The translations under genes were made by a program, and so were the position numbers. A stretch of DNA of 64,000 nucleotides from Asterias rubens (Eukaryota). The notes under the pieces are model-generated. The model saw only the letters and a program-made list of their open reading frames with translations. It searched no databases and was not told the origin of the DNA. The stretch spans positions 3,596,001 through 3,660,000 of the forward strand of contig NC_047066.1 of assembly GCF_902459465.1 (NCBI RefSeq), written 5' to 3'. Positions 7,329 through 27,270 of this stretch are shown here, piece after piece. The stretch's first letter is position 1, and every line of letters starts with the position of its first letter.

Positions 7329-7371
<43 letters not shown>

Positions 7372-7526
7372 TTTTGGTTTTTACCCATATACACCGATGT
7401 GTGTAGCACTGTATACTCAGTACTTTCCCCGAGTCCTGTGAAAAAAATCACAGGCATTTTACTCCGGTGGGATTCGAACCCACGACCCTTGCAATTCTAG
7501 AGCAATGTCATACCAACTAGACTAAA

Positions 7527-7559
<33 letters not shown>

Positions 7560-8625
7560 AGACGCTCCGTTTGAATAGTCACAAAAACATGCAGTCAAGA
7601 AAAAAAACTACAACACAAACCACTTGCTGACAGAGGGCATTATAACTCCTGTAACCAAAATCACAGTGATATTGGTTTGTTGATTCTTGTATGACCTTAT
7701 GACCTTAGTCTTGTTTTCAAGTGTTCTGCGCCTCTGATCATTTTGTATGATAGTGATATTGGTTTGTGGGGTGATAGTGGTTACACACCGACCTTTTGGA
7801 AACGAAGACCGGGAAGGCAACACATGCTCAACGTCTGTTTGGAGATAATGAAGGCATGCTGCGACCAAGCCAAATCTCAACACTTGCCCAAGATCAGTGT
7901 AGTTGACATATACAGTAGACAGAAACTTGTAGTCGCCTGCTCCGCAGCTGAAGGATGATGATTGGTTAATTTTTTGTTGTGACCAAGACTAGTAATATGA
8001 CCTTTGCCCTTTTTTCTGCAGGCACTTGATGTCATCAAGAAGTTCAAGGAGACGGAAACTATGCCTATTGATCGCGCCCAGATGAGACTGAAGATCTTGC
8101 TTCCCATCAAAGAGGGCAAAAAAATCAAGACCAAATTGAAAACGATGATAAAAACGATGGAACGAGAAGAGTTTGGAGAGCAGCTTGAGATGGTAGGTCA
8201 TTCTATGGGTGGTTGTTGTTCCTTGCTATCAACAGCAACTTGTGGAATTTAAAGACACTGGACACTATGGGTAATAGTAAAATTTTCACAGGTTTGTTAT
8301 TTTATGCATATGTTGAGATACGCCAAGTAAGAAGACTAGTCTTTGACAATTACCAAAGGTTTCCAGTGTCTTTAACAGCTTTATGAAATTGTATTGACCT
8401 ATGTATTGACCTATCTGGTTTAAAAAATTATTGTGGGCCATTTCAACTGGAAGTTATGTCAGCCAACGAGTTTAAGACTCTTCCATTTGTTTGCAGGTGT
8501 GTCTTGTGGATCCTGGCTGTTACAGAGAGATGGAGGATCTGATTCGCTCATCCACCAAGGGCCAGGGCGTCATCGAAGTCCTTGATCTTAAAGATGTCGA
8601 GGAAGGAGACGAAAAATTAGAATGA
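4560..8625 (+). CDS. SBDS: Ribosome maturation factor SBDS, 5 coding exons: 4560-4690, 5510-5639, 6426-6626, 8022-8192, 8497-8625 (762 nt, 253 aa)
   Basis: Spliced translation [37 protein letters not shown]...[11 protein letters not shown]...[11 protein letters not shown]...[10 protein letters not shown] matches the SBDS family end to end. All introns are GT-AG with consistent phases. Exon sizes 131/130/201/171/129 mirror the human layout as recalled (128/130/201/165/129). Confidence 0.97.
5791..6151 (-). mobile_element. Related tRNA-Leu-headed SINE subfamily in SBDS intron 2
   Basis: Minus-strand head GTGTCATCGCCGAGTGGATAAGAGCACCGAACTCAAGCTCTGG...GGGTTTGAATCC with a different body and a TAA tail. 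Confidence 0.75.
7331..7557. repeat. (TTA)n microsatellites (7331-7368 and ~7527-7557); a (GTTT)n run also lies at 6627-6658
   Basis: Read directly from the sequence. Confidence 0.9.
7376..7523 (-). mobile_element. Short tRNA-derived SINE family 2; further copies at ~22455-22620, ~30790-30948, ~35105-35275 (+) and ~42013-42165
   Basis: B-box GTGGGATTCGAACCC on the plus strand, with shared TACACCGATGTGTGT and CTAGAGCAG blocks. Confidence 0.65.
8249..8375. mobile_element. Internally deleted copy of MITE family 1 in SBDS intron 4
   Basis: Both TIRs and TTAA flanks are retained; only ~120 bp long. Confidence 0.7.
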
Positions 8626-11189
8626 AGAGGGGAACAAATCTCGGCATAAAGTCTCTCTTGCCGAAATTATAATCACATGAGGATGTTTCTTAATACTCCT
8701 TTACAAATGAGGCCGCTGCGGGAATTGGTCTCTGGGACCAGACTATTTCATGATGTTGGAATTTGATGGGAGCAGTGAGCTATCTATTTTGAAATGATAG
8801 TGTCTTGTAAGTCTTGTCCCCTGACCTTAAGTAAAACTAAAGGTTACTACAGCGGGTACAGTTTTAACAATGAACTGCACAAACCTGAGATGTTGTTTGG
8901 AATCTAGGCTTTGGTATTATTTAGTTCAAGAAATCAACTGCATGAAAAGTATTGCGTAAAAGCTCAAATTGCATGCATCGCAAGTTTTATCAGAATTGGC
9001 ACATTGTGAGGCCTGTATGCTTCGTTTTGGAAAGGGCAAGGGCACCAAGGCTTGTTCTCCTTGGTAAAAGGCATCCTATGAGGAAATTGTAAGTTTATAC
9101 TGGATCATTTTAAGGGCAACAAGGCAAGGACCAGGAGGCATGGAGGCAATCGCCTCTGTGGCCTCCATGAAGTATCGGGCCTGAATGTAGAATCAAATTG
9201 GTGACAAGGTACACCTTTATCTATACTTAATTTAAAGTCTGAGGCTGCGGTTATTTCTCTGCATCAGCCATGCAGAACTCCCCGGCAGATTTGTTATCAC
9301 ACGCTCTAACTTACAATTTCATGATTGTAGGCTAATGACGGAGGTTTATCCACAAGAGGGCGCTGTTTCAGCCAATAATACATCGGCTATCAGGATGACA
9401 AAACCGCACGATCACAGACTTGGAACCAAGTTTAACCCTTATCCTATGTTGTATTCAATGCATTCATAAGGGATGAAAAACTGGGACTGAATCAAGTGAC
9501 TTCAGCTATCAGCCATAGCCACTGTCAAAGCCATTAATTTGGACACAGCCTCAGATCCCAAAATAAACCAAACCATAACCTTGCTTTAATTTGATGGATC
9601 TACAAATGACATGTTTTCACAGATTTGTAATTTTTGGCATACACCAAGAGTGTTCGGAATACTGCGGTGCATTTTGGCGGTCTGGCGGTCGTAACCAATA
9701 ACTGTTTTCGGTCAACCGCCAGTGATCAACCAATGGCAAGTTCAACTTAAACAATACCAAAATTGTACAATTACCTTTAAGCCATTGTATAGTAGTCTGT
9801 TGGTGATGGCTTTCTTAAATTTTATTTAAAAGTCTGTGGAAGAGGAACATTTGAAGGTTTCAACCTGATATTGAAGCAATACATCAGCTGCAATACATTC
9901 TGAAATCTGATCTGAAGTTCTTCATGGATTTTACATTTTGTTCAAATTTACTTGATAGGTAGAATAAAGAGATTTTATTGTATTATTTATCATTTTTGTC
10001 AAGCACTGGTCACTTAGTGAGATTATTCATACTGTAAAAATCGCAGTGTAATGACGTTTGGTCTGAAAGACAAAGGTTAGAGGACAAAAAATGCAATCCT
10101 TTACAATAATTTGATTTGATAGTATGGGTGCTGGAAAATGCAAGAAATATGTGGTTACAAATTTTGCTGCAGGAGGTTAATTATTTTTCGCTGGACTTGG
10201 GGATTTATTTAGTTTTGGTTCAAGATGCACCTGTTGTTTATCTTCATCGTTGATAGAGGGCGCTGTTGACTACGAACGGTTTATCATCCCGAGTGAACCA
10301 CGCATTGAACCAAGACTATAATTTAACCTGCTTCTTAATAATAATAATAATAATAATAAGACTTTTAATTCTTCAAAGTAAAGTGTTCTTTAAAAATATT
10401 ATAAAAAATAAAAAAACGTAAGAGAAGACAAATTTAGCATAACGTTTTAATGGTATTTTTACAGGTCTGGTTGGTGGGTGTTTTCTGTGATACTCAGTTT
10501 TTTATGATTTGAATATTATCACTCATAAACTATTACTATGTAGCATAATAATTTGTCAAAATATTTTGTCACACTGATTTTTTAAACAAATTAATGAGTT
10601 ATTAAAAAAATGTTTAAGAATTAAATTCTTATGATTATACAAATACAATGTATTGACAGTTTTGTAACCAGTTTGTAGCCTACCTCTGGTTGTACCCTAG
10701 CTGACGTCACACTTCGAGGTTCGAGAATAACCCCAGACCAGCACTGAGCGCCTGGCGGGATGCATTTTTTATGCACAACGAAATTGCCACTGTCGTAGTG
10801 CTTTTCAAACGGAACTTTGTTTCTAAATCGATTTAAAAAAGGGAATCCTTAAAAATAAAAAAAAACATGTTGAGGACGGCAATTATAATGTGCAGAAAAA
10901 ACCCTGACCGTCAGATAAACCTTTGACCTAGCGTCAATTCACACGGCGGAGATTCATAGTATTCTCACACGTGTACACACATTACACTGAATAAAACATT
11001 ACAAAGTACACGCGCACAGCAGCAGACGATCAAAAAGTTCCTGCTGATGACGTTTATTCGGAGCAGACCAATCATAATACAGATATATGGAAAGCTTACA
11101 ATACGTCACTACACGTTTAGTGAGTGTACACCACTCTCCTTTTATGTGTGCCCTCCCGATCCCTTTAGTGTGTTTTAAACAAGGTATCT

Positions 11190-11520
11190 CTCAACGAATC
11201 ATCTTCAAGCTGATGCTCATTGTCCACAAAGGCAAGGCTCCCCTCTATATTTCTGAACTTCTCCAAGTTTACACTCCATCAAGAAATCTTCGATCAAGTT
11301 CCATGCTTCTTCTCATTGAACCCAAGTCTCAACACTCATGGGGAGACAGGTATATTTCTTCAGCTGCGCCACGCATCTGGAACTCTCTACCACTTAATCT
11401 TAGAACTTGTCTTTGTACCACAACATTCAAATCTCTTCTCAAAACTCATCTTATGTCACAGGTTTTCAAGGACTAATTTTGGTTGTGTCTGTTTTTTTCT
11501 TTGTTTTGTTTTTGTTTTGT
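11190..11520 (+). mobile_element. 3' fragment of an L2/CR1-group LINE (end of ORF2)
   Basis: Translation ...APLYISELLQVYTPSRNLRSS...SAAPRIWNSLPLNLR...FKSLLKTHL is typical of the L2-clade ORF2 C-terminus; a T-rich tail follows. Confidence 0.75.
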
Positions 11521-11958
11521 TTTGTTTGTTGTTGAAAACTGAAAAAACGCCCAGAATGGATTGACGGCCCAGCCAGGCGCGTAAGACACGACGTGCGTCT
11601 GAAGCACCCTTTGAAACGCGCACATTGAGACATTCATGCGCGCACGCATTAATCATCGAAACAAATGAAACGTCATAATATCTGGATAAAGAAACAAAAA
11701 GGCGGCGTCAAAACTACAATTATGACGTAACGTCATTAGAGACGAGGTAAATAAAAACGAGTGTTGGGAAGATGGAATAAAAACAAAAGGGAACACCCAT
11801 GCACTTCTAAAATGAATCAAGTATAAAACTTTGTGGTGGCAGTCGAAAGTGTTAGCTTTGGTACGTCACTCCGTTTTTGGAAACAATATTATCATTATTC
11901 GTTTTACGATGGTAAAATTAAACCAACTGTTAGCCTGAAAAGGGAGGCACTGGTACGA

Positions 11959-14900
11959 ATGGTAACTATGACTTACAAGAATGATCAGAAATACAGAGCT
12001 AGCAGCAGTAGCGGCAAGAAGGCCAGAGAGGCCGCCCAGGAGAGCGCAGAATGCCGGCGGCACGGCTACACCATGACGGATAAAACTCTCGGTACCGGGG
12101 CCTATGCTAAGGTCCGACTGGCTAGGGTTGGGGAGAAGAAACTGGAGAAGTGCGCCAAGCTCAAGCAGGATCTCAATGAGAAGGGCCATGACATGGTGAG
12201 GAACTTAGGCTGTGTCCGAAACGACGACTTCGCCTACAGAAGAATAGGCAGACGCGCGCGCCCTAGTCGTAGCTGTAGCCGAAGTCGCCGTTTCGGACAC
12301 GGCCTAACACACACATTTTTTTTGGTCAGAGTTCTTTTGGTGAACAAAAGAAAGCAAAAGACAGTATAGGCTTACTTGAACAGAATTGTCAACAAAACAT
12401 AATCACTTTAATTTGTAGGAAAGCTATAGAACTATACAATCCCGGCCGCCAAAATGCCCGAGCCACGTGATAATGGGATGAGCAGTCCGCGCATTGAGAG
12501 CAACTTTTAAACAGGGGCCCAAATTGCCGGGATCTTTTTTAGGGCGGCAAAATCAATACCAATCCCCCATTCAACAAGTTTTAAACACTGGTCTCAAATT
12601 GCACATATTATTTTCGCTCGCAAACGATAAGTCTGTAAGGCCTTACATGGGGGTCTCATTCATCCACACAGCGGTGCAATATAATATATCTTTACGGTCG
12701 TGGGGCATCCATATTGTATTTATGCAATTTAATTCAGTGCAACCAAAGTGAGGCTGGAAGGTCAACTGGTCCATTTCTGGTATAAATTTGCTCCATCGGC
12801 ATTGCACTCGGCGGACTTGACAAACAGTGTGCCAGCATGATCACACATGGGCCACCTTTTCGAAACCACGGCTTGGACTTTCAAACTCCGCCAGTTCAAA
12901 ATGTGCACTGAGGCCAAGCCCAAGAGGGAGCTCTGGTTTCGAAAAGGGCTTAAAGGCAGTGGACACTATTGGTAATTACTCAAAATAAATATCATCATAA
13001 AACCTCACTTGGTAATGAGTAATAGGGAGAGGTTGAAAGTATAAAACAATGTGAGAAACGGCTCCCTCTGAAGTGACGTAGTTTTCGAGAAAGAAGTAAT
13101 TTTCCCACGAATTTGATTTCGAGACCTCAAGTTTAGAATTTGAGGTCTCGAAATCAAGCATCAGAAAGCACACAACTTTGTGTGACAAGGGTGTTTTTTT
13201 CTTTCATTAATATCTCGCAACTTCGACGACCGATTGAGCTCACATGATTTTCACAGGTTTGTTATTTTATGCATATGTTGAGATACACCAACTGTGAAGA
13301 CTAGTCTTTGACAATAACCAATAGTGTCCACTGTCTTTAAATATGAAACTATTTTTACTCTACCTACAGGTGGCCATCAAGATTATCTCTAAGAAGCATG
13401 CACCCAGTGAGTACATCCACAAGTTCATGCCTCGTGAGATTGATGCTTTAAAGGTTACATACAAGCATCCACATCTGGTACGTAATAGCCACACCTCCAT
13501 GGATTTACAATGTGTAATATAATGGGTATTGTACTGTTGGGATTTCGCCAAAGCCCTTCTTAAAAAAAGTCAAATTGGATTAAAGAAAAATGGGGGAAAA
13601 ACCGGCAAACAATATTGTGACCCGCTCTGTGAAAATGAGTCACATGTAGCGATTTCAGGAATTGAGTTATATGCATGGCTGGAAAGAACACATCAGCAGC
13701 AGTAATTTGGTATGTGTCTAAGCTTTGGGGTGTATCGCGTTGCTGAGTTACTCCCGTTTGAAATTAGCCACCTTCACCATTTTGTTTTTGAAAAACGAAT
13801 TACAAGTAAAATGATATTTTAAACTACCATTGTGTGCAAAAGGATACTAATTAGACATAAGTATGATCACAAAATTGTTGTATTCATAGCTTTATTGCCT
13901 AAAAGTAAGTGTTCTAAAGATTAACCATGCAACTAAAGATCTTTAAAGGAAAGAAAAAAGTTTTTTGACCAACAGTTTTTTTTTTTAATGAACATGTGAC
14001 CTCACCTTGGGACGGAAGGTTCACAAAGCCACAGGTTTAAGATTAGGTTTTCACCCAGACTCTTACAAAATAATATCACTCTAAAAATTCCCGGGGCAGA
14101 ATTGATCCGGTTTCTGGCGGCTCGGGGCCTGACCCAATTTCCCAAGTTTCGGATCAGACTAATCCGGAAACTTAACTCAATAAAGATGGGATTCTCAATT
14201 CAGATACTGCGTAAGTTTGACTCCATTCCGGAACATTTCGACACTTGACCCTCGGGTCATACAGAGCCCAGCTAGCAGCCGGTTTCACGAAACGCTCGAG
14301 TTAAGACGAGTAATAGTCATAACTTAGGATTAAACTTAAGGTTTACATCAGTGCAAGGCTGGGACTCGTCCCAAGTCTTAAGATTAATCCTAGATTAGGA
14401 AGAGTTTAGTGAAATCGATTGCTGAGGAACCGGGATCAGTTTCATAAAGAGTTACGACAGAATGATGAGCAAAAGTGTGATGTCGCAATACAAATCACTC
14501 TGGCAATACTGACACCTCATCTTAACGGCAGTGGACACTATTGGTAATTACTCAAAATAATTATTCGCATAAAACCTTACTTGGTGACGAGTAATGGGGA
14601 GAGGTTGATGATATAAAACATCGTGAGAAACGGCTCCCTCTGAAGTGCCATAGTTTTCGAGAAAGAAGTAATTTTCCAAGAACTTGTTTTTCGAGACCTC
14701 AGATTTTAGAATTTGAGGTCTCGAAATCGACCATCTATTAAACGCACACAACTTCGTGTTCTTCCTCCATGGTGTGACAGGGGTGTTTTTTCTTTCATTA
14801 TTATCTCGCAACTTCGATGACCAATTGAGCTCAAATTTTCACAGGTTTGTTATTTAATGCATATGTTGAGATACACCATGAGAAGACCGGTCTTTGACAA

Positions 14901-17900
14901 TAATTACCAAAGGTGTCCAGTGTCTTTAAAAATGAATCTTAGTGCTTTGTGAAATCGAGCTCTTGAGTAATTCTGACTCGTGAGTTTTGAGTGTGTAAAT
15001 GAAAGTCCCAGTCCTATTTTGATTGTTTGTGATTTCACTTTACTGACAACAGATTCAACTTTACGAAGTATTTCGTTCCGAGACGCGCATCTTCCTCGTG
15101 ATGGACTACGCCCCCAACGGCGACATTCTCTCCTACATCAACGAATGTGTGCTGGAGACGGGATGTGCCGTCAAGGAGGAGACGGCCCGACGGCTGTTTA
15201 AGCACATCATAAGCGGCGTGGCGCATTGCCACCAACTCAACGTTGTGCACAGGTGACATACATTCACTTTTTGTTAATAAACGACGGCAATTTTCCAAAG
15301 TAACCTTTTCGAACCAACCTGGCGGATTTTTCGAGGGGGACAAAAGTAGTTGACAGATGTTCCATACAATATATTGCCTCAATATGGACCAACAAACAAA
15401 TGAAAGACGTCACAAACAACTTCAAAGTTTTGAAGAAAATCAGACGCAAAACATACCGAAGCATTCAACTATTATGACCTCATAATATATGAATACAGTT
15501 CTCTTCTCCAACAGAGATCTGAAATGTGAAAACATATTGCTGGATGAAAACGACAATGTAAAAATCTCAGGTAAGTTGGAAATAATTAAATATTGTTTGC
15601 TATAATACCTAAAATATCAGTCATCACTCAAAGCCTCTTTGTTACACTCTTGTCAACCTACAAGCTTACTGCTCCATGGTTCAAGTAGGACAAGTAGTCC
15701 ATCGGCTTTACGTCCTGTCTTATGGACCCTACCATACAAGTAGAAGTAGAAGTAGAAGTTCACCCATAAGTTATATATCCCTCGAGGAGTTTGTTTCAGT
15801 ATCGACAGATCATATTTATACTTATAACCAACGCCAAAGCGAGCACTTTTTCTCTCGCGAAACAATGATATTTTCAAACCCGCCGTTAGCTTTGTACATT
15901 TTCATTCACATCATTAAAGACTCTGGACACTATTGGTAATTGTCAAAGACTAGCCTTCACAGTTGGTGTATCTCAACACATGCATAAAATAACAAACCTG
16001 TGAAAGTTTGAGCTCAATCGGTCATCGAAGTTGCGAGATAATAATGAAAGAAAAAAAACATTCTCACACACGAAGTTGTGTGCGTTTAGATAATTGATTT
16101 CGATACCTCAAGTTCTAAACCTGAGGTCTCGAAATCAAATTCGTGGAAAATTACTTCTTTCTCGAAAACTATGGCACTTCAGAGGAAACCGTTTCTCACA
16201 ATGTTTTACACCATCAACCTCTCCCCGTTACTCGTCACCAAGAAAGGTTTTATGCCAATAATTATTTTGAGTAATTACCAATAGTGTCCACTGCCTTTAA
16301 GTACTCATAAACGCACACCTTTGGTAATTGCCAAAAACTCTCATCGGGTGAATTTCAACAAATGCAAAACAAATCTGTGAAAATTTGGACTCAATTGGTC
16401 ATCATATCGATCGCAAGATGAAAAAAAAAACTCACCCTGTTGCACAAAATGTGTGTGCTTACAGATGCCTGGAAAAGGCTTCAGGTCTGAATTTTTTTCA
16501 AATTCCAATATTTGAGTGAGAACTTACCTCATTCTAGAAAACTATACGTTACTTCAGAGGGAGCCGTTTCTCACAATGTTTTCAAAACTCTCCGTTGCTC
16601 GTTACTTAGTAGGCCTATGTGCTATAGTATTCTGAGTAATTACCAACAGTGTCCAGTGCCTTTATGCTTGATATTTCCTTGTTTATTCTCTATACCCGCG
16701 TTCAGATTTCGGATTTGCTTGTCGTTTCCCAACCAATCGATGCAACATGTTGTCCACATTCTGCGGGTCGTATGCATACGCGGCACCAGAGATCCTGTCA
16801 GCTAGAAACTACGACGGGAAACTCGCAGATATTTGGAGTTTGTAAGTAACCTGATTTTGTTTTTAAATACGCAGGCTAGGCTTACATAAGCAATGGCAAT
16901 TATTTCAAAATTATAATGATAATTACTTTATCTTTTGAGTCATTTAACTTGAGTGCCAAAGCTGAGTGCCATTTTTTATAGTTCGATAGTTTTTATTAGC
17001 AATTTTTCTGGACAGTTGGTCAAAGTGCTGAAATTTGTTTGCTAAGATACATTTTCCCTATCAAAATGTGTCTGTAATTTTTTTTTTTTTTTTTTATTTT
17101 TTTTTTAAACCTATAGCTCTCCTTTAAGGCTTCGTTATACTGTTGACTGAGTGGCTGTTCAAAAACAATACATTTTGAGCAGTACTGTGTCACCCAGTTA
17201 TTTTCAAGCGATAAGTGATTCCTTTCACCATCATGACCTATGTTGGTGATTATATTGTTCTTACAGAGGTGTTGTTCTATACGCAATGGTGAATGGACGT
17301 CTGCCATTCAATGATCAGAACCTCAACACACTTCTGGAACAAACCCGTCGAAAACTGAACTTCCAACCTTGGGTATCTTCCGGTAAGACAGAGTATCAGA
17401 TTTATCCCCATTAAAGCTGCATAAGATTACATGATCCAAGTCAAATAAAAAATCATACAACCAAAGAAACTGTCTTAAAGGCACTGGACACGTTTGGTAA
17501 TTGTCAAAGACTAGTATTACCACTTGGTGTCCTGTGCATAAAACAACTAATCTGTACAAATTTGGACCCAATTGGTCATCGAAGTTGCAATAAAATAATG
17601 AAAGAAAAACAGCCTTTTTGCACAAAATGTGTGTGCTTTCAGGATCAGATACTTAATAACAGACTTGAGACCTGAAGTCTGTTATTATTTAAGTGAGATA
17701 TTACCTCTTTCTCAATAACTATGTGTGAGAGGGAGCCGTTGATCACAATATTTTATACTATCAATATAGCTCTCTATTGCTCGTTACCAAGTAAGTTTTG
17801 ATCCTGACATTTATTTTGAATAATTACCAATAGTGTCCAGCTCTTCTAATTATAACTGCTTTCTTGTTCTGATGTTGTTCCTCAGACTGTGCCGATCTGA

Positions 17901-20050
17901 TCCGTAGATTACTAAGGACGCGTCCACTGACGAGACTCCGTATGCACGAGATCATCGCACATCCATGGGTTCGCAAAAACCTCAACACTAAGAATCTAAC
18001 AGCTTTTCCCTCCAGCCAGGTGAGCCATCAGAAAAAATGACAACATCGATTTCAGACAAGGAGATGAAACTATCATTCTGTTTTTGAGCTTCCTAAAACT
18101 TCAATATGCTTCAAACAAGAGAGCTTATTTAAAAAAAAAAATTAAAAAAAAGGAATAGCATTAATTCTTTAAACTGCCTGACATTGTGTTGTGGCATATT
18201 GGGGTTATGTCTATGATGACCACAGCACAATCTTCTGTATAATAGCCGAGGAGTGATTTTCGAAGAGGATTGACAAAGCGACTTGATACAACTGTACTAT
18301 AATTATTTTGGCAAGACAAAGCACGAAAGGTCAAAATTGTGTTGCTTCAATTCCCGCCAATGTACAAAAATACACACGTCCTTGCGCGCGTAATACAGTT
18401 ACTTTTATGTAACTTTCATCCATATAAAATCAGAACGGAAATCAGCAGTAGGCCTTCAACAATCTGACACAGACCCAACACTATTCCCCTCTTTGCTGTT
18501 ACAGGCCTTCCTAAAAGTCATACAGGAAAGTTCTGATGAGAATTTGACCGGTAAAGCAGACAAGTACGCCAGTCTCAAAGAACCAACGCTTGTCCTGAAA
18601 CCTAACGGCAAAACAGTTCGACTGGACCCCAAAGCCGGTAAGTCCATTGCCAGTAGTCAGGCCAGGCCCAAGACCCGCCACCAACCATGTAATAATTCTC
18701 TTTTGAGCGAGTGTTGGCTCTGAAAAGAGCCTGTTTGGTCTCAACGTTTTGAACTGTGCAGTATACTCTGCTCATCTTCAGGAGACACACAAATTATTAC
18801 ACTGTTGTACCCGCAATTAAGTATTTCTTTCTAGTTTATTCTTATTCTTCACACCATGCAAAAGCTTGATACATCACTTATGATCTAAATACAATGATGA
18901 TGCAGAGAAATGTCTGCAGTTTGGGCTGACGAAAATCTAATTGGTTCTGAAGTGGAATCGATAAGAATTAGAATAATGTGATTGTTGCTGCGATCTAGAA
19001 CACAGTCAAAACGATAATTTCGTACACATTTTCCTCCCAACAGACACAAAGACTATAACGAAAGATAAAGAGGAACAAGCCAGTAAGCCAGCGGCTCGAC
19101 ACCACCAGAGTGTACACTTTGTGCCTTCACCCGAGTGCCCACATCAGAAGAGTCCAAAGCCAGACACACCCCCAAGTTGCACTTCAACCAAGAAAGCAAC
19201 CCCAACAAATAAGACGGCTGACAGCACCCGCATCAAAAACTTATATCGTCGCATCCTCAAGCCGTCCTTGGGCACTGAGTACGTCTTTGAAGTTGTCGAG
19301 AATGAGCAGGAGCAGGAGCGACTGATTGAGAAGAGGCTACGGATGAATGCGTGGGGCAAAAGCCCTCCTCCCAAGACCCCTCGCCGGATCTTGGACACCA
19401 GGAAGCAGATCCGGAAAGCAGTCCAACCAGGAGCTTCATCACCTCAAGCATCCTCACCCTCACCCAGGGTGACCAAGGCATACGCCCCGACCCAGACTAT
19501 GTCTGATACAACGAATGATAGCCTGGCTGGTTATACAACCACCTTGGTACCTGTGGATATCAGGGAGAAAATCTACATGCGACCAAGCAGAGATGGGTCT
19601 CCTGGAGAGCGGGAATCTATCACCCGTATACGGTACCGTCTGGGGTTGTCTCCAACACCAACTCCAACTGGACAGGCAGATCGGAAGAAGTACTCAGCGA
19701 GTGAGCCTGCTAGTTTGACGACTGGGAAGAAGCCAGGGGTGTCCAATTTCATTCACGTCCACGGGAAGACGGAGCTGTGGAAGAGGGCACTCCGCGGGAC
19801 GCTCCAGAAGGAAGCCAGCAAGAAGAACGACCTGCGGTTAGAGTCTCCGAGCCCGAGGGCCAGCCCGGTCACGGCGTCTGGTTCGGCAAATGGTGGCAGT
19901 AGTAAGTTCAAGGCAAAGATGCGTGTTCTGGCAAGAAGGAACTTACTGAACCGCATCATGCTGAAGCCAGAGCCGGAGGTGCGAACAAGTGAGCTCCTTA
20001 ATCAGCTACAGAAGAATCTTCCACTACTTAGTGAGACAGTTGCTGTCTAA
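11959..20050 (+). CDS. TSSK5: Testis-specific Ser/Thr kinase, TSSK5-like, 9 exons: 11959-12195, 13370-13477, 15053-15252, 15515-15570, 16706-16841, 17267-17382, 17886-18019, 18505-18637, 19044-20050 (708 aa; alternative ATG at 11968)
   Basis: Kinase motifs [49 protein letters not shown] and HPWV are all in frame across GT-AG junctions. HRDLKCEN is the TSSK signature. The insert between beta2 and beta3 ([13 protein letters not shown]) and [14 protein letters not shown]...TYKH resemble mouse TSSK5 as recalled. The subfamily call is less certain than the kinase call. Confidence 0.88.
12208..12304. mobile_element. 97-bp hairpin MITE just inside TSSK intron 1
   Basis: Near-perfect inverted arms GGCTGTGTCCGAAACGACGACTTCG / CGAAGTCGCCGTTTCGGACACGGCC, with TA on both sides. 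Confidence 0.7.
12950..13340. mobile_element. MITE family 1 copy (TSSK intron 1)
   Basis: TTAA-AGGCAGTGGACAC...GTGTCCACTGTCT-TTAA. Confidence 0.8.
14522..14929. mobile_element. MITE family 1 copy (TSSK intron 2), apparently nested in an older MITE
   Basis: TTAA flanks and TIRs. The flanking sequence carries split ends GTTTCATAAAG / CTTTGTGAAAT of another element. Confidence 0.78.
15914..16300. mobile_element. MITE family 1 copy (TSSK intron 4), opposite orientation to 14522-14929; a degenerate second copy follows at ~16315-16662
   Basis: TTAA-AGACTCTGGACAC...GTGTCCACTGCCT-TTAA. Confidence 0.8.
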
Positions 20051-21361
20051 GAGGAAGCTTAGGGTGGGGTTTACTGTCTAGAGTACAGAGAAGCATCGGA
20101 CTGGGGGGGGGGGGAGGGTGGGTTAAGTATTACACTTGGGAGATGTGGGTTGTTGGGTTTGCATCTGGTCTAAACCATGGAGAGAGGAATACATGTTTAA
20201 TGAACTGCTTCTTACTTCCTCTGAGAAGTATTCTAATGCAGACCGAGAAATGAGAGATGGTCGATTGCTGGAATAAATTACAAAAATGAGGGTGCAATAT
20301 GAACGCAATAGTGATAGATGTCAGAGTGTGTCTGCGTTCGGGGTTAAATAGTTATCACGGTGCGGCCATCTTGATTTATTATCACATTCAAGTCAATGAA
20401 ACCAAACCGAGGCTGCGGGGGAAAATAAACGTCTGGCACAGAGTTGCTGTAATTCAGTTTTCATTTGTTTTCACTAAAAGATGTCATGTGTAATAAAAAG
20501 CGAATGGATTGCTATTCTCTCATTGGCCCGAGGTCAAGACATGTCAGCTGGGGTGCAAATTACTTAATCACGTCATACGAGAGAAAAGGTAAACCAAAAA
20601 AGCAAGTAGACAAATCCTTTTATCGTTCGATTCAAGACAGAGAACATAATGTTCTAGTACTTAAAAAAAAGGGTTAATTCCATTCAACTTCTATTCCTTA
20701 ATTCATTCCTCACGAAAATGAAAGTATCTTTCCACATAATTATTTGAAATGTAGACAAGAGTGTAACAAATGATGCAGTTATTTAAATGCATTTAAAATT
20801 TTGTCATTTTGACGACATAACTGTTTGTTAATATGAATTGTAAAAGTAAACTTTACAAACCGTTTTCTAATTAAAGAATAAATAACGCATAGACAGAACT
20901 TCAAAAACTAATAATCTGTTTTAATACTGAACACCTTGACCTTGTTATACAGTCAAGGATTGTTTTAAGCGGGTATGTGTTAAAAGGAAACGTTAATAAA
21001 ATACTTATAGTCAACAAAGATTATAATAATTGTACGACTTTTATCACAGATTAAACTGTCTTTATAAAGAGTAAGAGATTTTCAAACTGTTTAAACTTTA
21101 CGATCAAGGTGAAAACCTTATTTTTTATAAGTCAGTGTTTTCAATGATGAATCAATACCCACAATTAGGTTGGGTATTTTGCACTTGATCCGGTTACCTC
21201 CCACATTGTCCCCAATTATCAACAGTATAGCAAATTTCTTTAACCCTTGTTTACAAATAGAGGAACCTTGCATAGCTTGAGGTTTAATGGTTAACTTTTA
21301 AATACAAAATGCTGGTATTTCTGCATAGTCACAGTCCACTGAAAATGTCTTAATGGTGTCC

Positions 21362-21464
21362 CACCAGAGCACTCAAAAGCATTTCTTTCTCAAGATAATA
21401 ACCTAAGCCTAGGGCTTCTTGAGTCACCATCTGTCATTAGCGCTTATTGTGGTCCTCTGCTGGT
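21362..21464 (-). promoter_or_regulatory. SECIS element (type II) in the SELENOH 3'UTR exon
   Basis: Minus strand reads AUGAC-AGAUGGUGAC-UC-AA-G-AAGCC CUA GGCUU-AG-GUUAUUAUCU-UGAG. This gives a UGAC/UGAG core, a 10-bp helix II, an unpaired AA, an apical mini-stem, a lower helix AAGCG/UGCUU and an extended basal stem. It lies below a strong acceptor at 21500-21501. Confidence 0.87.
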
Positions 21465-22739
21465 ACGCCAAACTTTTAACTCTCTAGTGGCTGAGATGAC
21501 TGTGTTGGGGGACACAAGAAGGAAAGCAAGACTTTAGAGAGGGGCAACTTGGTAGACATCTATGAGCAAGTTCGAGTGCGAACATTTAGCTGACCTGTGG
21601 CTCTTAAAGGAACACGGATAGGCCGTTTTATGGAGTCAAAATTTTGACACCACAAAATGGCTGACCGTATTTCTTCGCGACGTAAAAGGAAAACCGTGCA
21701 ATTTTAAGGCATGTTTGTGTGGATCATTATATTCTACTTTTAAGTTTTCGAGCTAACCATTTGCATTTCATAACAAAAAAGTTTCAAACGCTTTTCAAAG
21801 ATCAACTCGACCGATCCAAAGCTCTGTGTAAAAGAGTGGAAAATTTCACTCGCTAGTCCAAGTGGCGTCAATTTTACTCTTTTGAGAGTGAATGTCAATC
21901 TGTGTCTCTCTTTTTGATTGAATTTGGAACAAACTTCAATCAAAATCTAGTTGAAAGTACCTGCCATAAAAATGGCTCTTTGCAAGAGTGGTATGGCGGA
22001 CAAAATGGTTTTTCACTCTTTTGTAACATAAAGTACTGACCAGCAACATACACGCGAAGTGACGTATTCACTCGAACGACTCGTTTGAAAACCTAGTCAA
22101 CCATCGACACCAAGGTATTCAATCCTCTATAGCCTTCGGCATTTGAGCTATAGTGTCACTGGTTACCCATGTAAGCAAGGAACGGGCTATCGGGACTACG
22201 GAAGAAACCATGGTCTAGAGGCTGGTTCCGAATGATCAATAACACTAGTCAACCAATAGTCGACCAGCCTGGGTTTGAGCCAAAGTAGTCAACCTTTAGA
22301 TAACCCTGGTGCACACTTGAACTTGCTCCGTGTCAGTAAGCCCGAGATAAGTCAAAGGTACAGTTTCATATTACTGCTTAGGCACAAAAAGTAGCTAAGC
22401 ACAACAAAATGATTAACATTCAGTTGTTGCCTTTTGCACTGATGTGTATCAAGCAGGATTGGATTGAACCCATGACCTTTGCCATTCTAAAAGAAACTTT
22501 ATCACTATACCACTGAGCTTACATTGCCTAGAGGAAGTTCAACTCACAGGGATTTGAACCCATGACCTTTGACGTTCTAGAGCAGATGTCCCTACCACTA
22601 GACCACCGAGCCTCTCCAGTGCCTTAGAGGAAGTGCAAATCCCATAGTCTTATTTATGACATCTATTAAAATTCATTTTGTTAAATTTTTAACATCTATC
22701 AAAATTATCATTTTCTTACCTGTTTAGTGTAATCAAAGT

Positions 22740-24335
22740 CTACAAGGCTTTCTTGAACACTTCAATCACAACAGAAGACTCTGGAAACTTCAACTTACGT
22801 GGAGGTCCCTTCTTGACACCAGTCCAGAGAAGAACTTCTGTGGATCAAAAATACAATCACAGTTATCATTGAACCAGTAAAAAAAATTATTGTTCTGGTG
22901 AAGAAATTATAAATATAGTGAAAATGATTGTAATGGTGACAGTTATTGTTACGATGAAAACTTATCCTAATGGTGAATATCGCTCTGTGGTTTTTCAATT
23001 TTTCCTCTCAAAAACTTGACAACTTTAGTGACACGAAAACTTCTACAGGTAAATTATTTTACATACATCTTCATTCACAGTGTAGGGATTCATGTCATGA
23101 TCAAAACCCTTTAGCGTCTAAACATTGTACTATCTACTTACCAGACCCATCCTCTTTAAAGAGAGATATCTCAAAGCTCTTGGAGCGAGGCTTCGTTGGG
23201 TTCTTCTCTGCACCGATATCGGGGAACTCCGACTGCAATGCCTCAATAATCTGATCGGCATTGCGGCCGTACACGCGTCAGGAACGACTGTAAAATAAAT
23301 GCAAATAATATATGGCAATTAGTGAAATGAGTACTGGGCAATTCAAGTGTTCAAAGATACATGTTAAAAAAACAGATCAGGTTCTGCAGTGGCAGTGGAC
23401 AGCATTTTTTAGTAGGTTGAGGAGAACTTTCGTCTTTTGACTTTTATAATATTAATAGTATGGAAACCACCCCCAGCAAAGTCGCACACTACAAAGTCGC
23501 CTCCTAGCAAAGTCACCCCCTCACTTAAATTACAAAGTCGCCCCCTCTCAAGTTAAAGTCGTCCATGTCAAAATACTATATCGGTAGACATATATTCTGG
23601 AGTAATGTAATGATTTATTATTGACGTGACTGATTCATACAAGATACAAGATTACTGTTTACTGGGAGAGTACCTGGATCGACCTAGTGACGTATTGAGG
23701 TCATGGTATATTACTGCGCTGTGTGTATATAAAGTAGTACCTTCACAGTCCACTGACAGAGTTGCCCCCACGACTTTGTAGTGGCTAGTGGGCGACTTTG
23801 CAGTGAGTGGGTAACTTTACTGGGGGCGAGTTGACTGACATTCAATTATAGAGTCTCACTTTTTATGTCTGACCTGATCAAATGCAAGACGAATTTCCAC
23901 TAATTACACAATTGATTATGAATTAAAAAAGTATCTGATTAATCCCTCAATTGAGAAATTCCTGTTGTTAAAAAATTAGTGAAAAAGTGGCGGCAGGATA
24001 CGGAAAGTTTTCCCAAGCCCAGCAGTCAGCAGATGAGACTACACGAGTCTCACGACCAGGCAGTCGACCACCTCACACAAGGAGTGCACAGCGTGTCATC
24101 AAAATGCATGCACAACTTGATTGGGCGTCTATGGTGTTGCTATAGAAATTGACGGTATGACTTACCAGTGCTCAATCACAACTCGCATTTTACCAGAAGG
24201 CAATTTCTCCGACTCCGCTTTTCCCTTCTTCAACTTCTTGACGGTTGGCACTTCAGTTTTAGTTGATTGCCCTCCGTCATTCTCAGAGTTTCCCGCGGGC
24301 TCGCTCGAACGTTTTTTCCCACGTGGAGGAGCCAT
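22740..24335 (-). CDS. SELENOH: Selenoprotein H; coding exons 24335-24166, 23287-23142, 22837-22740 (137 aa, Sec60 encoded by TGA at 23280-23278)
   Basis: Translation MAPPRGKKR...VVIEHCRSURVYGRNA...KNPTKPRSKSFEI...LWTGVKKGPPRKLKFPE...KKAL* matches SelH (human VVIEHCTSURVYGRNA and LWTGIKKGPPRKLKFPE). Splice phases fit and a SECIS is found downstream. Confidence 0.94.
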
Positions 24336-24660
24336 GTTGTTTATGTACTAGCCCAACGCTATAACGCTAGAGGTCGCACTTCAAAAAAATAACAGCAACA
24401 AATATTGCGATTTGAGCCTTTTCGAAACGATAAGTTTCAGTGTTAGGCTTAATAAGCAGAACTACATGTACGGTAGAACAAATGGCAAAGCCGAAGTGGA
24501 AAATAGTTTCGAAAAGGCTTTTTTTACTTGAAACTACCAATAGAGGTCGCCCTTTCAAAAATGGAAATCACCAAAAATTTTGCTCGGCTATGAAGAAAAG
24601 TTTGTTTTACAAACTGAAGATTTAGCGAATTCTTTTGTCAACGCAAGGGCTCTTTTAAAG
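24336..24660. promoter_or_regulatory. Putative bidirectional promoter between the SELENOH and MRPL57 start codons (325 bp)
   Basis: Divergent ATGs at 24335 (-) and 24661 (+). There is no room for two independent long promoters. Confidence 0.7.
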
Positions 24661-27270
24661 ATGTGGCTGACTCTAGCTGTGATGGCTTTGCGCCGTAACT
24701 CTAGATACACCCCTGGTCGCCAATTTAGTGGGTAGGTATATGCTGTTGAATTACGTACAAAAAGTATCGTTGCGACGTATATTTCCGACACTTCATACTT
24801 GTGCTGCATGCCAAACGTGCACAGCACATATCGTAAATAGTAAAAATAATAAGCTGCAAACCAAAGTTATTACAATATTCTATACCTATTGATAACAATA
24901 GCGGATAGCTGCCATATATATACATCTAGGTCGTTTTGGAAAGATTTCCGTACCTATTTCAAATTATAGCCTAGTAATTGCATGGAGGAATATATGAAAT
25001 ACATAGTATTAATGGGATGATGGTATTTGTATCACAACACTACACAGACTCAGAGTTAGACAAGAGTTTAGACAGTTTAGTAAGAGTTACACACAGTACA
25101 GCAGTGACATTACACCAATAGACCCAGTAACTAGGGCGCTGTACTCCTTTTGAATTTTGTTTTTTCATTATCGGTCATAGTATGACCGACAATGACAACA
25201 TGGATAACTTTCCGTATGGTGCCACCACTTTTACCCTCATTTTTACAAAAAGGGATATCTCTTTGAGGTAAATTAGATACTATATTATTTCATATCGAAT
25301 GAAAAAGTGGTGGCGCCATACGGAAACGTTTCCGACAACATTTCGGAAAAAAGGAGTACATAAACATACCCAATGATTTGCACCACTTTTTCACTCATTT
25401 TTACCAAAAAATTAAACAAAAGGAGTAGCTCTGTTTTTTTTTGAGTAATTTAATTAAGTAAATTGTTATAAAGTCTAATTTTATATACTTATAATTTGAT
25501 AATTTATTATGTTATAATGAATGCAAAAGTGATGGCAGGATACAGAAATTTCACCAACATTTTATTTAGACAAGCTATGTTTATTATATAACCTTGTTTG
25601 ATCATTATGTAACTTTATTATACGAGTAAGACAGCACTTTCTTTTGACATTAAAACCTATACAAACCAAGTTACAACTTTTCAAAGTGCACCAAGTATTA
25701 CTCCTAGTCCTAGAACGTCTCCACACGATAGCGGAACGAACCTCATAGTTCTAGGAGTACCCGGGTATTAGATTTAGTATTATTAGATTTAGACTAGACA
25801 AACTGACAATTTGACAAACTAGACAAACTGACAAAGTCCAAAAGAAAATATGGGCGCTTGAGACTGAACACACACAACTTTATTTTATTGCTTCTGCCAA
25901 ATGTGTTTATCATTATCAGGAAACATCGGAAGTATCGTCCTGTGACTTCAAACATGGTCTACAACATGGTGAAAAGACTGGATGTTGAGAAAGAAAATGA
26001 GTCATATCTCTGCAAACCGTACCTGACAATGGTAGGTCAAACAAATTTAGTCATTCCTAAAAAGATATAATTGTTAAAAAGTCCTAATGGATGCAGTAGC
26101 CTCTATACAACTAACACAAAACATAAAAAACAATGAAATAAAACTGTGCAAGTCTCAAGCGCATTCAAACATTGGAATCCAATAACGAGCCCAAGTTTGT
26201 TTCCTTCAGGCCCTGAAGCACGTACCGGGACCAATCCCTCAAATGTTTGAATTTGCGCGAGACTTGCACGGTCTTTATGGAGCAAAAAAAGTAAAAGTCC
26301 CTTGAAATTTCTTGTGTGCCCCTTGGCTTGAGAAAGCCAATGTTCATGCCGGCCTTGAATATTGCTGTTGATAGGGCTCAACAATTTCCCTTTGGTAAGG
26401 GACTACGACTTCTTTAAGGAAAGTGTACATTTGTGTTGGAACTTTGCAGAGGGCACCACAGTAATACACCGATCCATTAAGCCGCGCCCATTTCTCATTG
26501 ACCAATCACAGCCGCGAAATCTGATCACCATTTGAGCCGTTTGGTGATTTTTGCTCTAATGGTGATCAGGTTTCTTGGCTGTGATTGGTCAACTTGTAAG
26601 GAGGCAGGGCTTAATGGATTGGTCTATTGCTGTGGGGGCCGTGGGTTACATGAACAAACCTCGAAATAACCCTCTGCACCCACAGTGATTGCAGTGGTGT
26701 CCTGTGCTTTCGCTGTGGTGCCCTTTGCAAAGTTCCAGTACAAATTGACACTTTCCTTATAGAAGTCGTAGTCCCTTACCAAAGGGAAATTGTTGAGCCC
26801 GTTCAAGAGCAATATTAAAGGCCTGCATGAACAATAGCTTTCTCTCTTATAAACGAAAGAGAGGTTGGTGGTAATACCATGTGAGTATCTCTTTTGAGTA
26901 GTGTTGGTTTTGAAAAGAACCGGTGGGTGACAACTCAACATTTCGGGAGAATGCTGGACTATGTTTCTGGATGCTTCATAAGGACTTGGCTCAGTGGAGC
27001 GAGATATCCACATTGTGTAACCGCAAACCTTTCTTAGATACTTCCAGCATGCAAAGTTTTGAAACCTACTAACTTCTTCAAAGTTGAATGTTAATACACA
27101 ATGATTGTCTTAATGATTTTATTCAACAGTCGGAAGAAGACGGCCATGCTAAGGAGCAGAATGCTCTCGAGTTCAAGGAGCTGCAGGACTTCAGACGTCA
27201 CAAAAACATGAAACCACATCGCTACCTAGCGGACCATTTCAGCCATCTTGAATCTTCCAAACATTGGTAG
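24661..27270 (+). CDS. MRPL57: Mitochondrial ribosomal protein mL63 (MRPL57/MRP63); exons 24661-24731, 25920-26031, 27130-27270 (107 aa)
   Basis: MWLT...PGRQFSGKHRKYR...NMVKRLDVEKENESYLCKPYLTMSEEDGHA...PHRYLADHFSHLESSKHW* parallels human MFLT...PGRQWIGKHRRPR...[22 protein letters not shown]...GHA...PHRFIADQLDHLNVTKKWS as recalled. GT-AG junctions are in phase 2 and phase 0. Confidence 0.87.
26330..26844. repeat. Nested inverted repeats in MRPL57 intron 2 (~130-bp outer arms plus an inner palindromic MITE at 26463-26628)
   Basis: 26330-26461 is the reverse complement of 26713-26844 with scattered mismatches. The inner arms are AATACACCGATCCATTAAGCC / GGCTTAATGGATTGGTCTATT. Confidence 0.8.

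What the first reader, a model, noticed from the sequence alone, without database searches (positions are those of the whole stretch)
23278..23289. Hidden selenoprotein: in-frame UGA decoded as Sec in a CxxU redox motif split by an intron
Seen: exon 1 ends ...GAG CAC TG| and exon 2 starts |T CGT TCC TGA CGC GTG TAC, giving C57-R-S-U60, followed by 77 more codons that match SelH. The Cys codon is built across the splice junction. Established: SelH has a thioredoxin-like CxxU motif. The ORF track misses this gene entirely, and automated annotation may truncate or mis-splice it.
Basis: partly seen in the sequence, partly recalled or inferred. Interest (0 to 1): 0.7.

Follow-up and report, generated by a model that had tools for sequence, protein, structure and literature searches.

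The report
Sea-star selenoprotein H gene, confirmed
This is a real, expressed copy of the well-known antioxidant-type gene selenoprotein H, in which an apparent stop signal (UGA) is read as the rare amino acid selenocysteine; it is ordinary biology, though annotation software often gets such genes wrong.

Summary
On the minus strand, exon 1 (24335-24166) ends ...GAG CAC TG and exon 2 (23287-23142) starts T CGT TCC TGA. This gives C57-R-S-U60, with the TGA at 23280-23278, followed by 77 more codons to a TAG at 22742-22740.

- **Expression:** spliced RNA contigs from three studies join exactly these exons and keep the TGA.
- **3'UTR intron:** the contigs also show a third, 1,220-nt intron starting 20 nt after the stop.
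- **SECIS:** the last exon carries a canonical type II SECIS hairpin (21470-21354), 82 nt after the stop in the mRNA. It is the only such structure on the minus strand of the window. It matches the SECIS of sea-cucumber SelH, with compensatory changes in helix II.
- **Homology:** the protein matches named selenoprotein H at E 8e-30 (Holothuria) and 9e-23 (beaver). Orthologue transcripts have UGA at the same codon, and both coding introns sit at the same places as in Holothuria.
- **Machinery:** the genome has two tRNA-Sec genes and SepSecS.

Points against are minor. Rfam's SECIS model does not score this hairpin, and Sec insertion itself is untested.

Verdict: a single-copy SELENOH orthologue, a new member of a known kind, of low interest. 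The scan has already noted this gene's SECIS (s1-151025) and other selenoprotein genes in this genome.

The parts
24166..24335 (-). Exon 1, coding part. ATG at 24335-24333 (A at -3, G at +4, in-frame TAG 15 nt upstream). Codons 1-56 plus TG of Cys57. Basic N-terminus MAPPRGKKR and a second basic patch, KKLKKGK.
   Evidence: RNA contigs cover 24166-24323 and stop 12 nt short of the ATG. The N-terminus MAP..RGKKR is shared with beaver SELENOH and kept in organism C.
23288..24165 (-). Intron 1, 878 nt, GT..AG, splitting the Cys57 codon after its second base (TG|T).
   Evidence: Joint 23287/24166 in X1, X2 and X10. The Holothuria SelH gene has an intron at the same position and phase.
23142..23287 (-). 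Exon 2: T of Cys57, R58, S59, Sec60, then 45 codons and the first base of codon 106.
   Evidence: The 45-aa post-UGA piece finds SelH proteins in 1.84 billion representatives.
23278..23280 (-). In-frame TGA (codon 60), read as selenocysteine. It is followed by C (UGA-C context).
   Evidence: No variant at these positions in any of four runs that cover them. It aligns with the UGA of orthologue transcripts.
22838..23141 (-). Intron 2, 304 nt, GT..AG, phase 1.
   Evidence: Joint 22837/23142 in three runs. Same position and phase in Holothuria.
22720..22837 (-). Exon 3: codons 106-137, TAG stop at 22742-22740, then 20 nt of 3'UTR.
21500..22719 (-). 3'UTR intron, 1,220 nt, GT..AG, starting 20 nt after the stop. 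It holds a tRNA-Ser-like SINE and highly repeated elements. Absent from the Holothuria gene.
   Evidence: Joint 21499/22720 in X1, X2 and X10. tRNA-like element. Holothuria's 3'UTR is collinear with its genome.
20900..21499 (-). Exon 4, all 3'UTR. ATTAAA signals at 21288-21283 and 20925-20920. RNA contigs end at 20900-20969.
21354..21470 (-). Type II SECIS element. Long helix I; core AUGA at 21437-21434; 11-bp helix II (21432-21422 with 21403-21393); unpaired CAAG with the AA at 21420-21419; 5-bp mini-stem with a 3-nt loop; 3' core UGAG at 21392-21389.
   Evidence: MFE -40.3 kcal/mol, z -3.4. Only hit of a strict SECIS scan on the minus strand of the window (the one + strand hit is weak), and no random hit reaches its helix I energy. 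The scanner recovers 7 of 8 Rfam SECIS hits of this genome. Homologous to the Holothuria SelH SECIS, with compensatory changes.

Best explanation
This is the single-copy selenoprotein H (SELENOH) gene of an echinoderm, probably a sea star. It is transcribed from the minus strand and spliced from four exons into an mRNA of about 1.0 kb. Translation starts at 24335. The UGA at codon 60 is recoded as selenocysteine by the standard eukaryotic route: a type II SECIS hairpin in the 3'UTR, 316 nt downstream of the UGA and 82 nt after the true stop in the mature mRNA, would recruit SBP2, eEFSec and Sec-tRNA(Sec). The product has 137 residues: a basic, fast-evolving N-terminal tail and a thioredoxin-like Rdx-family domain whose C57-x-x-U60 pair is the redox centre. 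By homology it should act as a nuclear or nucleolar oxidoreductase. Shown here: exon structure, expression, retention of the UGA, homology, the SECIS structure and its conservation, and presence of tRNA-Sec and SepSecS. Inferred: actual Sec insertion, the fold, localisation and enzymatic role.
For: (1) The spliced frame has one internal stop, TGA at codon 60 in C-R-S-U. (2) Single contigs of 953-1022 nt in three runs from three studies join 24166|23287, 23142|22837 and 22720|21499, all GT..AG on the minus strand, and keep the TGA. (3) The 45 residues after the UGA find 33 proteins at E<=0.001 among 1.84 billion. The checked hits are named Selenoprotein H: Holothuria, Castor, Portunus, Mauremys and birds. 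(4) The assembled protein, with X at Sec, scores 8e-30 against the Holothuria transcript product and 9e-23 against beaver SELENOH, at the size of the whole library. (5) Three orthologue transcripts have an in-frame TGA at the aligned codon, which a TGA=Trp gene caller read as W. (6) Both coding introns lie at the same codon positions and phases as in Holothuria. (7) The SECIS has AUGA...AA...UGA geometry, an 11-bp helix II, a mini-stem and a long helix I of -22.3 kcal/mol. It is the only minus-strand hit in the window (the single + strand hit is weak: 9 pairs, helix I -10.1), and 0 of 226 random hits in 200 shuffles reach -20. The same scanner finds 7 of 8 Rfam SECIS_1 hits of this genome, with helix I between -14 and -27. 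(8) Against the Holothuria SelH SECIS, 10 of 11 helix II pairs are kept, 2 through changes on both sides and 4 through one-sided changes. The only SECIS difference in organism C turns a G-U pair into A-U. (9) The genome has two tRNA-Sec(TCA) genes at 78 and 76 bits, and SepSecS at 366 bits. (10) Orthologues pass the Pfam Rdx cut-off over the whole aligned domain.
Against: Rfam's SECIS_1 model reports nothing on this hairpin even at E<=10 on a 161-nt stretch. The homologous Holothuria element reaches only 21 bits against a cut-off of 35. The 3' core reads UGAG, whereas the published consensus is KGAW (PMC3753652), and the AA lies 13 rather than 12 nt after the core. Five of the 11 helix II pairs are G-U. 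The window's own exon pieces are too short to score in Pfam. RNA contigs stop 12 nt short of the proposed ATG. No protein-level evidence of Sec insertion exists here.
Confidence: 0.93

Rival explanations
1. The UGA is a true stop. The gene makes only a 59-residue basic peptide, or is a decaying pseudogene, and the downstream similarity to SelH is a relic.
For: UGA is normally a stop. Rfam does not recognise the hairpin. There is no protein-level evidence.
Against: The 77 codons after the UGA are open and 44-56% identical to SelH from other phyla. Exon 2 shows no differences in organism C, while the adjoining intron does. The SECIS is conserved with compensatory changes. The mRNA is present in three studies although the UGA lies 136 nt upstream of an exon junction, which would mark it for decay if it were simply a stop (50-55 nt rule as cited in PMC4911915).
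Confidence: 0.03
2. The UGA is read through, but not as selenocysteine: for example near-cognate Trp, Cys or Arg insertion. The downstream hairpin would then be a chance or unrelated structure.
For: UGA followed by C is a leaky context (general knowledge). The 3' core departs from the consensus at one position.
Against: The hairpin has every defining SECIS part and lies in the right exon and on the right strand. It is homologous to the SECIS of the orthologue. The genome keeps full Sec machinery. The position is Sec in characterised SelH proteins (general knowledge; the family is named).
Confidence: 0.03
3. The contigs come from a different, Cys-containing paralogue, and the window copy is silent.
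For: None found.
Against: The genome has only one match to the exon 2 peptide, the window locus itself. The RNA contigs match the window with 0-3 differences per piece and carry the TGA.
Confidence: 0.01

Closest known systems
Selenoprotein H (SELENOH, formerly C11orf31) of vertebrates, e.g. Castor canadensis A0A8C0WVW6
   Same: Same length class. Same start MAP..RGKKR. Same VVIEHC-x-S-U-RVYGRNA motif and C-terminal NP.KPR..SFE ... W.G.KKGPPRKLKFPE blocks. 52% identity over 114 aligned residues, E 9e-23. Rdx-family domain.
   Different: R instead of T at the first x of CxxU. A longer acidic/basic linker before the domain. An extra intron in the 3'UTR. Whether vertebrate genes share the coding intron positions was not checked here.
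Holothuria leucospilota (sea cucumber) selenoprotein H: transcript L023/P0035 and genome L022
   Same: Closest relative found: 64% identity over the post-UGA exon piece, E 8e-30 overall. UGA at the same codon. Both coding introns at identical positions and phases. A homologous type II SECIS with the same AUGAC core start and UCUUGA 3' side.
   Different: The Holothuria protein has a much longer acidic N-terminal tail (213 aa). Its SECIS lies 154 nt after the stop in the same exon, with no 3'UTR intron. Its public gene model KAJ8042802.1 skips the CxxU-UGA stretch.
Other Rdx-family selenoproteins (SelW, SelT, SelV; Pfam PF10262)
   Same: Thioredoxin-like domain with a CxxU motif near its start. 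UGA recoded through a 3'UTR SECIS.
   Different: The sequence groups with SelH rather than these. The genome's two direct PF10262 hits are elsewhere, on contig C3. The basic N-terminal tail is typical of SelH.

Membership tests
Selenoprotein H (SELENOH) | CxxU motif at the start of the thioredoxin-like domain, in the context VVIEHC-x-x-U-x-VY | tested here: met
   C57-R-S-U60 within RVVIEHCRS-U-RVYGRN. Aligned column by column with Holothuria, L019 and beaver SelH.
Selenoprotein H (SELENOH) | Significant full-length sequence similarity to proteins named SelH | tested here: met
   33 hits at E<=0.001 with the 45-aa piece. The checked hits are named Selenoprotein H. The full protein scores 8e-30 to 1e-16 against them.
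Selenoprotein H (SELENOH) | The in-frame UGA aligns with Sec/UGA (or Cys) of homologues, not with a stop at the protein's end | tested here: met
   TGA at the aligned codon in transcripts L019, L020 and L023. 77 open codons follow it.
Selenoprotein H (SELENOH) | Basic N-terminal tail (nuclear targeting / AT-hook-like), nuclear or nucleolar location | not testable with these tools
   Basic stretches PRGKKR and KKLKKGK are present. The start MAPPRGKKR is conserved in organism C. Location is inferred from the literature only (PMC13134290).
Rdx family (Pfam PF10262), thioredoxin-like fold | Match to the Pfam Rdx profile above its cut-off | tested here: inconclusive
   The window's exon pieces (56, 45 and 31 aa) give no hit, and the six-frame genome search does not pick up the locus. 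The aligned orthologues P0035, P0005 and P0011 pass at 28-34 bits against a cut-off of 22.6. The spliced read-through protein has no reference, so it could not be submitted.
Rdx family (Pfam PF10262), thioredoxin-like fold | Predicted beta-alpha-beta thioredoxin-like fold with CxxU between strand 1 and helix 1 | not tested
   No structure prediction was run, for the same reason: no reference exists for the spliced protein.
Eukaryotic SECIS element (type II) | Core quartet UGAN / KGAW, helix II of about 11-12 bp, unpaired AA, extra mini-helix, helix I; located in the 3'UTR | tested here: met
   AUGAC / UGAG; 11-bp helix II; CAAG; 5-bp mini-stem; long helix I. Lies in the last exon of the spliced mRNA. 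Only minus-strand hit in the window and beyond all random hits. Positive control 7 of 8. One departure: G instead of A/U at the last core position (consensus from PMC3753652).
Eukaryotic SECIS element (type II) | Score above the Rfam SECIS_1 (RF00031) gathering threshold | tested here: not met
   No SECIS hit at E<=10. The orthologous Holothuria element scores 21 bits against 35. Only 4 elements in the whole genome pass, so the model is insensitive here.
Eukaryotic SECIS element (type II) | Structure conserved through compensatory change in an orthologue | tested here: met
   Against Holothuria, 10 of 11 helix II pairs are kept, 2 by double and 4 by single changes. Only two species, so support is modest.
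Selenoprotein (any) | The organism has the Sec-decoding machinery | tested here: met
   Two tRNA-Sec(TCA) genes. SepSecS at 366 bits. Further SECIS elements in the genome.
Selenoprotein (any) | Selenocysteine actually inserted at the UGA | not testable with these tools
   Needs 75Se labelling, mass spectrometry or ribosome profiling.

The most novel reading that the evidence does not exclude
The 1,220-nt intron that begins 20 nt after the stop codon and separates it from the SECIS is absent from the sea-cucumber gene. It could act as a regulatory switch in this lineage. Polyadenylation inside the intron would give SECIS-less mRNAs that terminate at codon 60. Intron retention would move the SECIS from 82 to about 1,300 nt after the stop. 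Either would tune SelH output with selenium supply or tissue. All three RNA contigs seen here are the fully spliced form, so there is no positive evidence for this.
Probability: 0.06. Interest if true: 0.4.

Novelty: new member of a known kind. Interest (0 to 1): 0.18.

Why it matters
It adds a correct, transcript-supported SELENOH gene model, with SECIS and a 3'UTR intron, for an echinoderm genome. It also gives a concrete example of how gene callers mishandle this family: plain ORF lists miss it here, and public SelH models of sea cucumber, crab and turtle splice around or drop the UGA. That is useful for curation and for counts of the echinoderm selenoproteome. It does not change what is known about selenoproteins. 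The identical placement of the intron inside the Cys codon in sea star and sea cucumber is a small point about the age of that gene structure.

Tried and rejected
- **Pfam on the exon pieces:** the three pieces gave nothing. A six-frame PF10262 search of the genome missed the locus. The pieces are too short.
- **Rfam:** tried at three scales and found no SECIS.
- **First SECIS scan:** my loose energy-only scan gave only junk and paired the right AUGA with the wrong 3' partner. Two stricter versions missed the element until helix I was scored by energy and helix II was allowed to stop before the AA. The final version is.
- **Word-index protein searches:** these found only a 46-aa fragment and the Holothuria proteins. 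They say nothing firm about whether this genome's annotation holds a SelH model.
- **Covariance model:** a model built from this genome's own Rfam-positive SECIS elements was abandoned. The MAFFT alignment gave RNAalifold no consensus pairs.
- **More distant transcripts:** SECIS elements of L019 and L020 could not be placed convincingly and were not used.
- **Turtle model:** a look-up of the turtle model's locus found no record, so conservation of intron positions in vertebrates was not tested.
- the spliced, read-through 137-aa protein has no reference. It was analysed only inside scripts, with X at the Sec position.
- both were busy once each and were repeated unchanged.

Full report
**What is in the sequence**

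The feature lies on the minus strand. Exon 1 runs from an ATG at 24335 to 24166 and ends GAG CAC TG, followed by gtaagt. After 878 nt, a ttttacag acceptor is followed by T CGT TCC TGA CGC GTG TAC. Joining the three coding exons (24335-24166, 23287-23142, 22837-22740) gives 137 codons plus TAG. The single internal stop is TGA at codon 60, at 23280-23278. The motif is C57-R-S-U60, the Cys codon is split TG|T by the intron, and exactly 77 codons follow. The plain ORFs over the exons are only 57 and 46 aa long, so a list of ORFs of 60 aa or more would not show the gene.

**Expression and splicing**

Four public runs were laid on 20700-24700. In three of them (X1, X2 and X10; one organism, three studies), a single contig of 953-1022 nt covers four blocks: 20900/20914/20969-21499, 22720-22837, 23142-23287 and 24166-24285/24317/24323.

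- The three joints skip 1220, 304 and 878 nt, and each reads GT..AG on the minus strand.
- The two coding junctions are exactly those predicted.
- The third joint is a 3'UTR intron that starts 20 nt after the stop.
- The TGA is inside the contigs, and no run shows a variant there.
- The only exon 2 difference is 23214 C>T, which changes Gly82 to Ser.
- The contigs stop 12 nt short of the ATG, which I read as coverage running out near a short 5'UTR.

The ATG has an in-frame TAG 15 nt upstream and a good context. Its product starts MAPPRGKKR, like beaver SELENOH. The fourth run (X7, another organism, unspliced) keeps the frame of exon 1 through 21 substitutions and keeps MAPPRGKKR.

**Homology**

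The 45 residues encoded after the UGA in exon 2 were scored against 1.84 billion representative proteins and found 33 hits at E<=0.001. The hits that were looked up are named Selenoprotein H: Holothuria leucospilota, Castor canadensis, Portunus trituberculatus, Mauremys mutica and two birds.

The assembled protein, with X at the Sec position, was handled only inside a script. At the size of the whole library it scores:
- 8e-30 against the Holothuria transcript product,
- 8e-27 against an unnamed invertebrate transcript,
- 9e-23 against beaver SELENOH.

In three transcript-derived homologues the aligned position is an in-frame TGA, which a TGA=Trp gene caller had written as W. These orthologues pass the Pfam Rdx cut-off over the whole aligned domain. 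The window's own exon pieces are too short to score.

Mapping the Holothuria transcript on its genome shows the same two coding introns at the same codon positions and phases...CAC TG|gt ... ag|C AAA TCC TGA, and ...GAA G|gt ... ag|AA. The gene is single copy in this assembly.

**The SECIS**

Rfam found no SECIS. A first-reader note on the same window (s1-151025) pointed to 21362-21464.

Folding 21475-21350 of the minus strand gives an MFE of -40.3 kcal/mol, z -3.4, with all parts of a type II SECIS:
- a long, interrupted helix I;
- AUGA at 21437-21434;
- an 11-bp helix II;
- an unpaired CAAG holding the AA at 21420-21419;
- a 5-bp mini-stem with a 3-nt loop;
- UGAG at 21392-21389.

A strict scan for this geometry finds exactly one hit on the minus strand of the whole window, this one, and one weak hit on the plus strand. 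Random sequences of the same composition give about one core-plus-helix II hit per 64 kb. None of 226 such hits in 200 shuffles reaches its helix I energy of -22.3 kcal/mol. As a positive control, the same scanner recovers 7 of the 8 Rfam SECIS_1 hits of this genome and the Holothuria SelH SECIS, with helix I between -14 and -27.

The element lies in the last exon of the spliced mRNA. It is 82 nt after the stop and 316 nt after the UGA.

It aligns with the Holothuria SelH SECIS without gaps through the core and helix II. Ten of 11 pairs are kept, two through changes on both sides and four through one-sided changes. The one difference in organism C (21427) turns a G-U pair into A-U.

The Holothuria element gets a sub-threshold Rfam SECIS_1 match of 21 bits, E 0.14, aligned in just this way. 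Only four elements in the whole 418-Mb genome pass the Rfam cut-off. I therefore read the Rfam blank as lack of sensitivity.

Real departures are G at the last 3' core position, where the published consensus is KGAW (PMC3753652); one extra base before the AA; and five G-U pairs in helix II.

**Machinery**

The genome has two tRNA-Sec genes with anticodon TCA, at 78 and 76 bits, and SepSecS at 366 bits.

**How it most likely works**

The UGA at codon 60 is recoded as selenocysteine by the SECIS in the 3'UTR. This gives a 137-residue protein with a basic N-terminal tail and an Rdx/thioredoxin-like domain whose CxxU is the redox centre.

The UGA lies 136 nt upstream of the exon 2/3 junction. Failure to insert Sec should therefore expose the mRNA to nonsense-mediated decay, under the 50-55 nt rule as cited in PMC4911915. 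The true stop lies only 20 nt before the last junction and should not trigger decay. These last two points, and the nuclear oxidoreductase role (PMC13134290), are inferences.

**Comparison with what is known**

SelH is listed as a selenoprotein of placozoans, cnidarians, annelids and amphioxus (PMC3473315). It is described as a widespread nucleolar oxidoreductase (PMC13134290). Both that paper and PMC3753652 stress that selenoproteins are routinely misannotated.

That is visible here in other species. The public Holothuria model splices from an upstream exon straight to RVYKRN and loses the CxxU that its own transcript encodes. The crab and turtle models also drop it. I could not see this genome's own annotation.

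The best hit to a sea cucumber, the assembly size of 417.6 Mb and earlier notes of the scan point to an echinoderm, probably a sea star. That is an inference.

**Verdict**

This is a genuine, expressed, single-copy SELENOH orthologue with its SECIS. It is a new member of a known kind, solidly supported but ordinary.

The only slightly unusual feature is the lineage-specific 3'UTR intron, full of repeats, between the stop codon and the SECIS. The scan had already flagged this gene's SECIS (s1-151025) and other selenoprotein genes of the same genome (s1-150238, s1-150208).

Noticed in passing
window 21500-22719 (minus strand): The 3'UTR intron of SelH holds a tRNA-Ser(AGA)-like element (22539-22613; ARAGORN call, but only 17 bits in Rfam) followed by a second tRNA-like half. 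It also holds stretches with read depths in the thousands to hundreds of thousands (21638-22039, 22174-22441), so these are repeated elements, probably SINEs or other transposons. The sea-cucumber gene has no intron here.
   Followed up: partly
window 24336-24700: A second transcript contig starts sharply at 24550 in two runs and runs away from SelH, at a depth like that of SelH, so the two genes may share a roughly 215-nt promoter region. That region holds a 39-nt direct repeat (24368-24406 and 24541-24579, 74% identity) flanking a 17-nt inverted repeat (24415-24431 / 24503-24519).
   Followed up: partly
window 24201-24308: In run X7 (another organism) one contig differs at 21 positions within 108 nt of exon 1. 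Nine residues of the N-terminal tail are replaced and the frame is kept. The next 267 nt upstream show no difference and exon 2 shows none. This local divergence is unexplained: a fast-evolving tail, a divergent allele or gene conversion are all possible.
   Followed up: partly
window 18691-18736 (minus) and 26882-26926 (minus): Histone 3' stem-loop matches. The first scores 32.2 bits, just under Rfam's 34-bit cut-off, which suggests a replication-dependent histone gene next to SelH. The second is weak (19.8 bits).
   Followed up: no
window 26498-26592: A near-perfect hairpin of about 95 nt that matches a plant microRNA family model on both strands (38.8 and 33.9 bits, far below the cut-off). 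It is most likely a palindromic repeat or a small transposon, not a microRNA.
   Followed up: no
L022 (Holothuria leucospilota CM055964.1, locus 5929-15226) and P0002, P0020, P0014: Public SelH gene models of a sea cucumber, a crab and a turtle omit or splice around the CxxU-UGA stretch. The sea-cucumber transcript (L023) shows the true 213-aa product with UGA at codon 136.
   Followed up: yes
G000 C3:15577285-15577368 and C3:15584293-15584376 (L001, L002): Two Rdx-family (PF10262) exon matches lie 7 kb apart on another contig. They are probably a tandem pair of SelW/SelT-like genes.
   Followed up: no
G000 C1:8632164-8632249 and C8:7966654-7966739 (L003, L004): Two tRNA-Sec(TCA) genes on different contigs. 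Many invertebrates have one.
   Followed up: partly
window 19121-20050 (+): A 309-codon open frame in a GC-rich stretch (46% GC) between SelH and the histone stem-loop. It was not identified.
   Followed up: no
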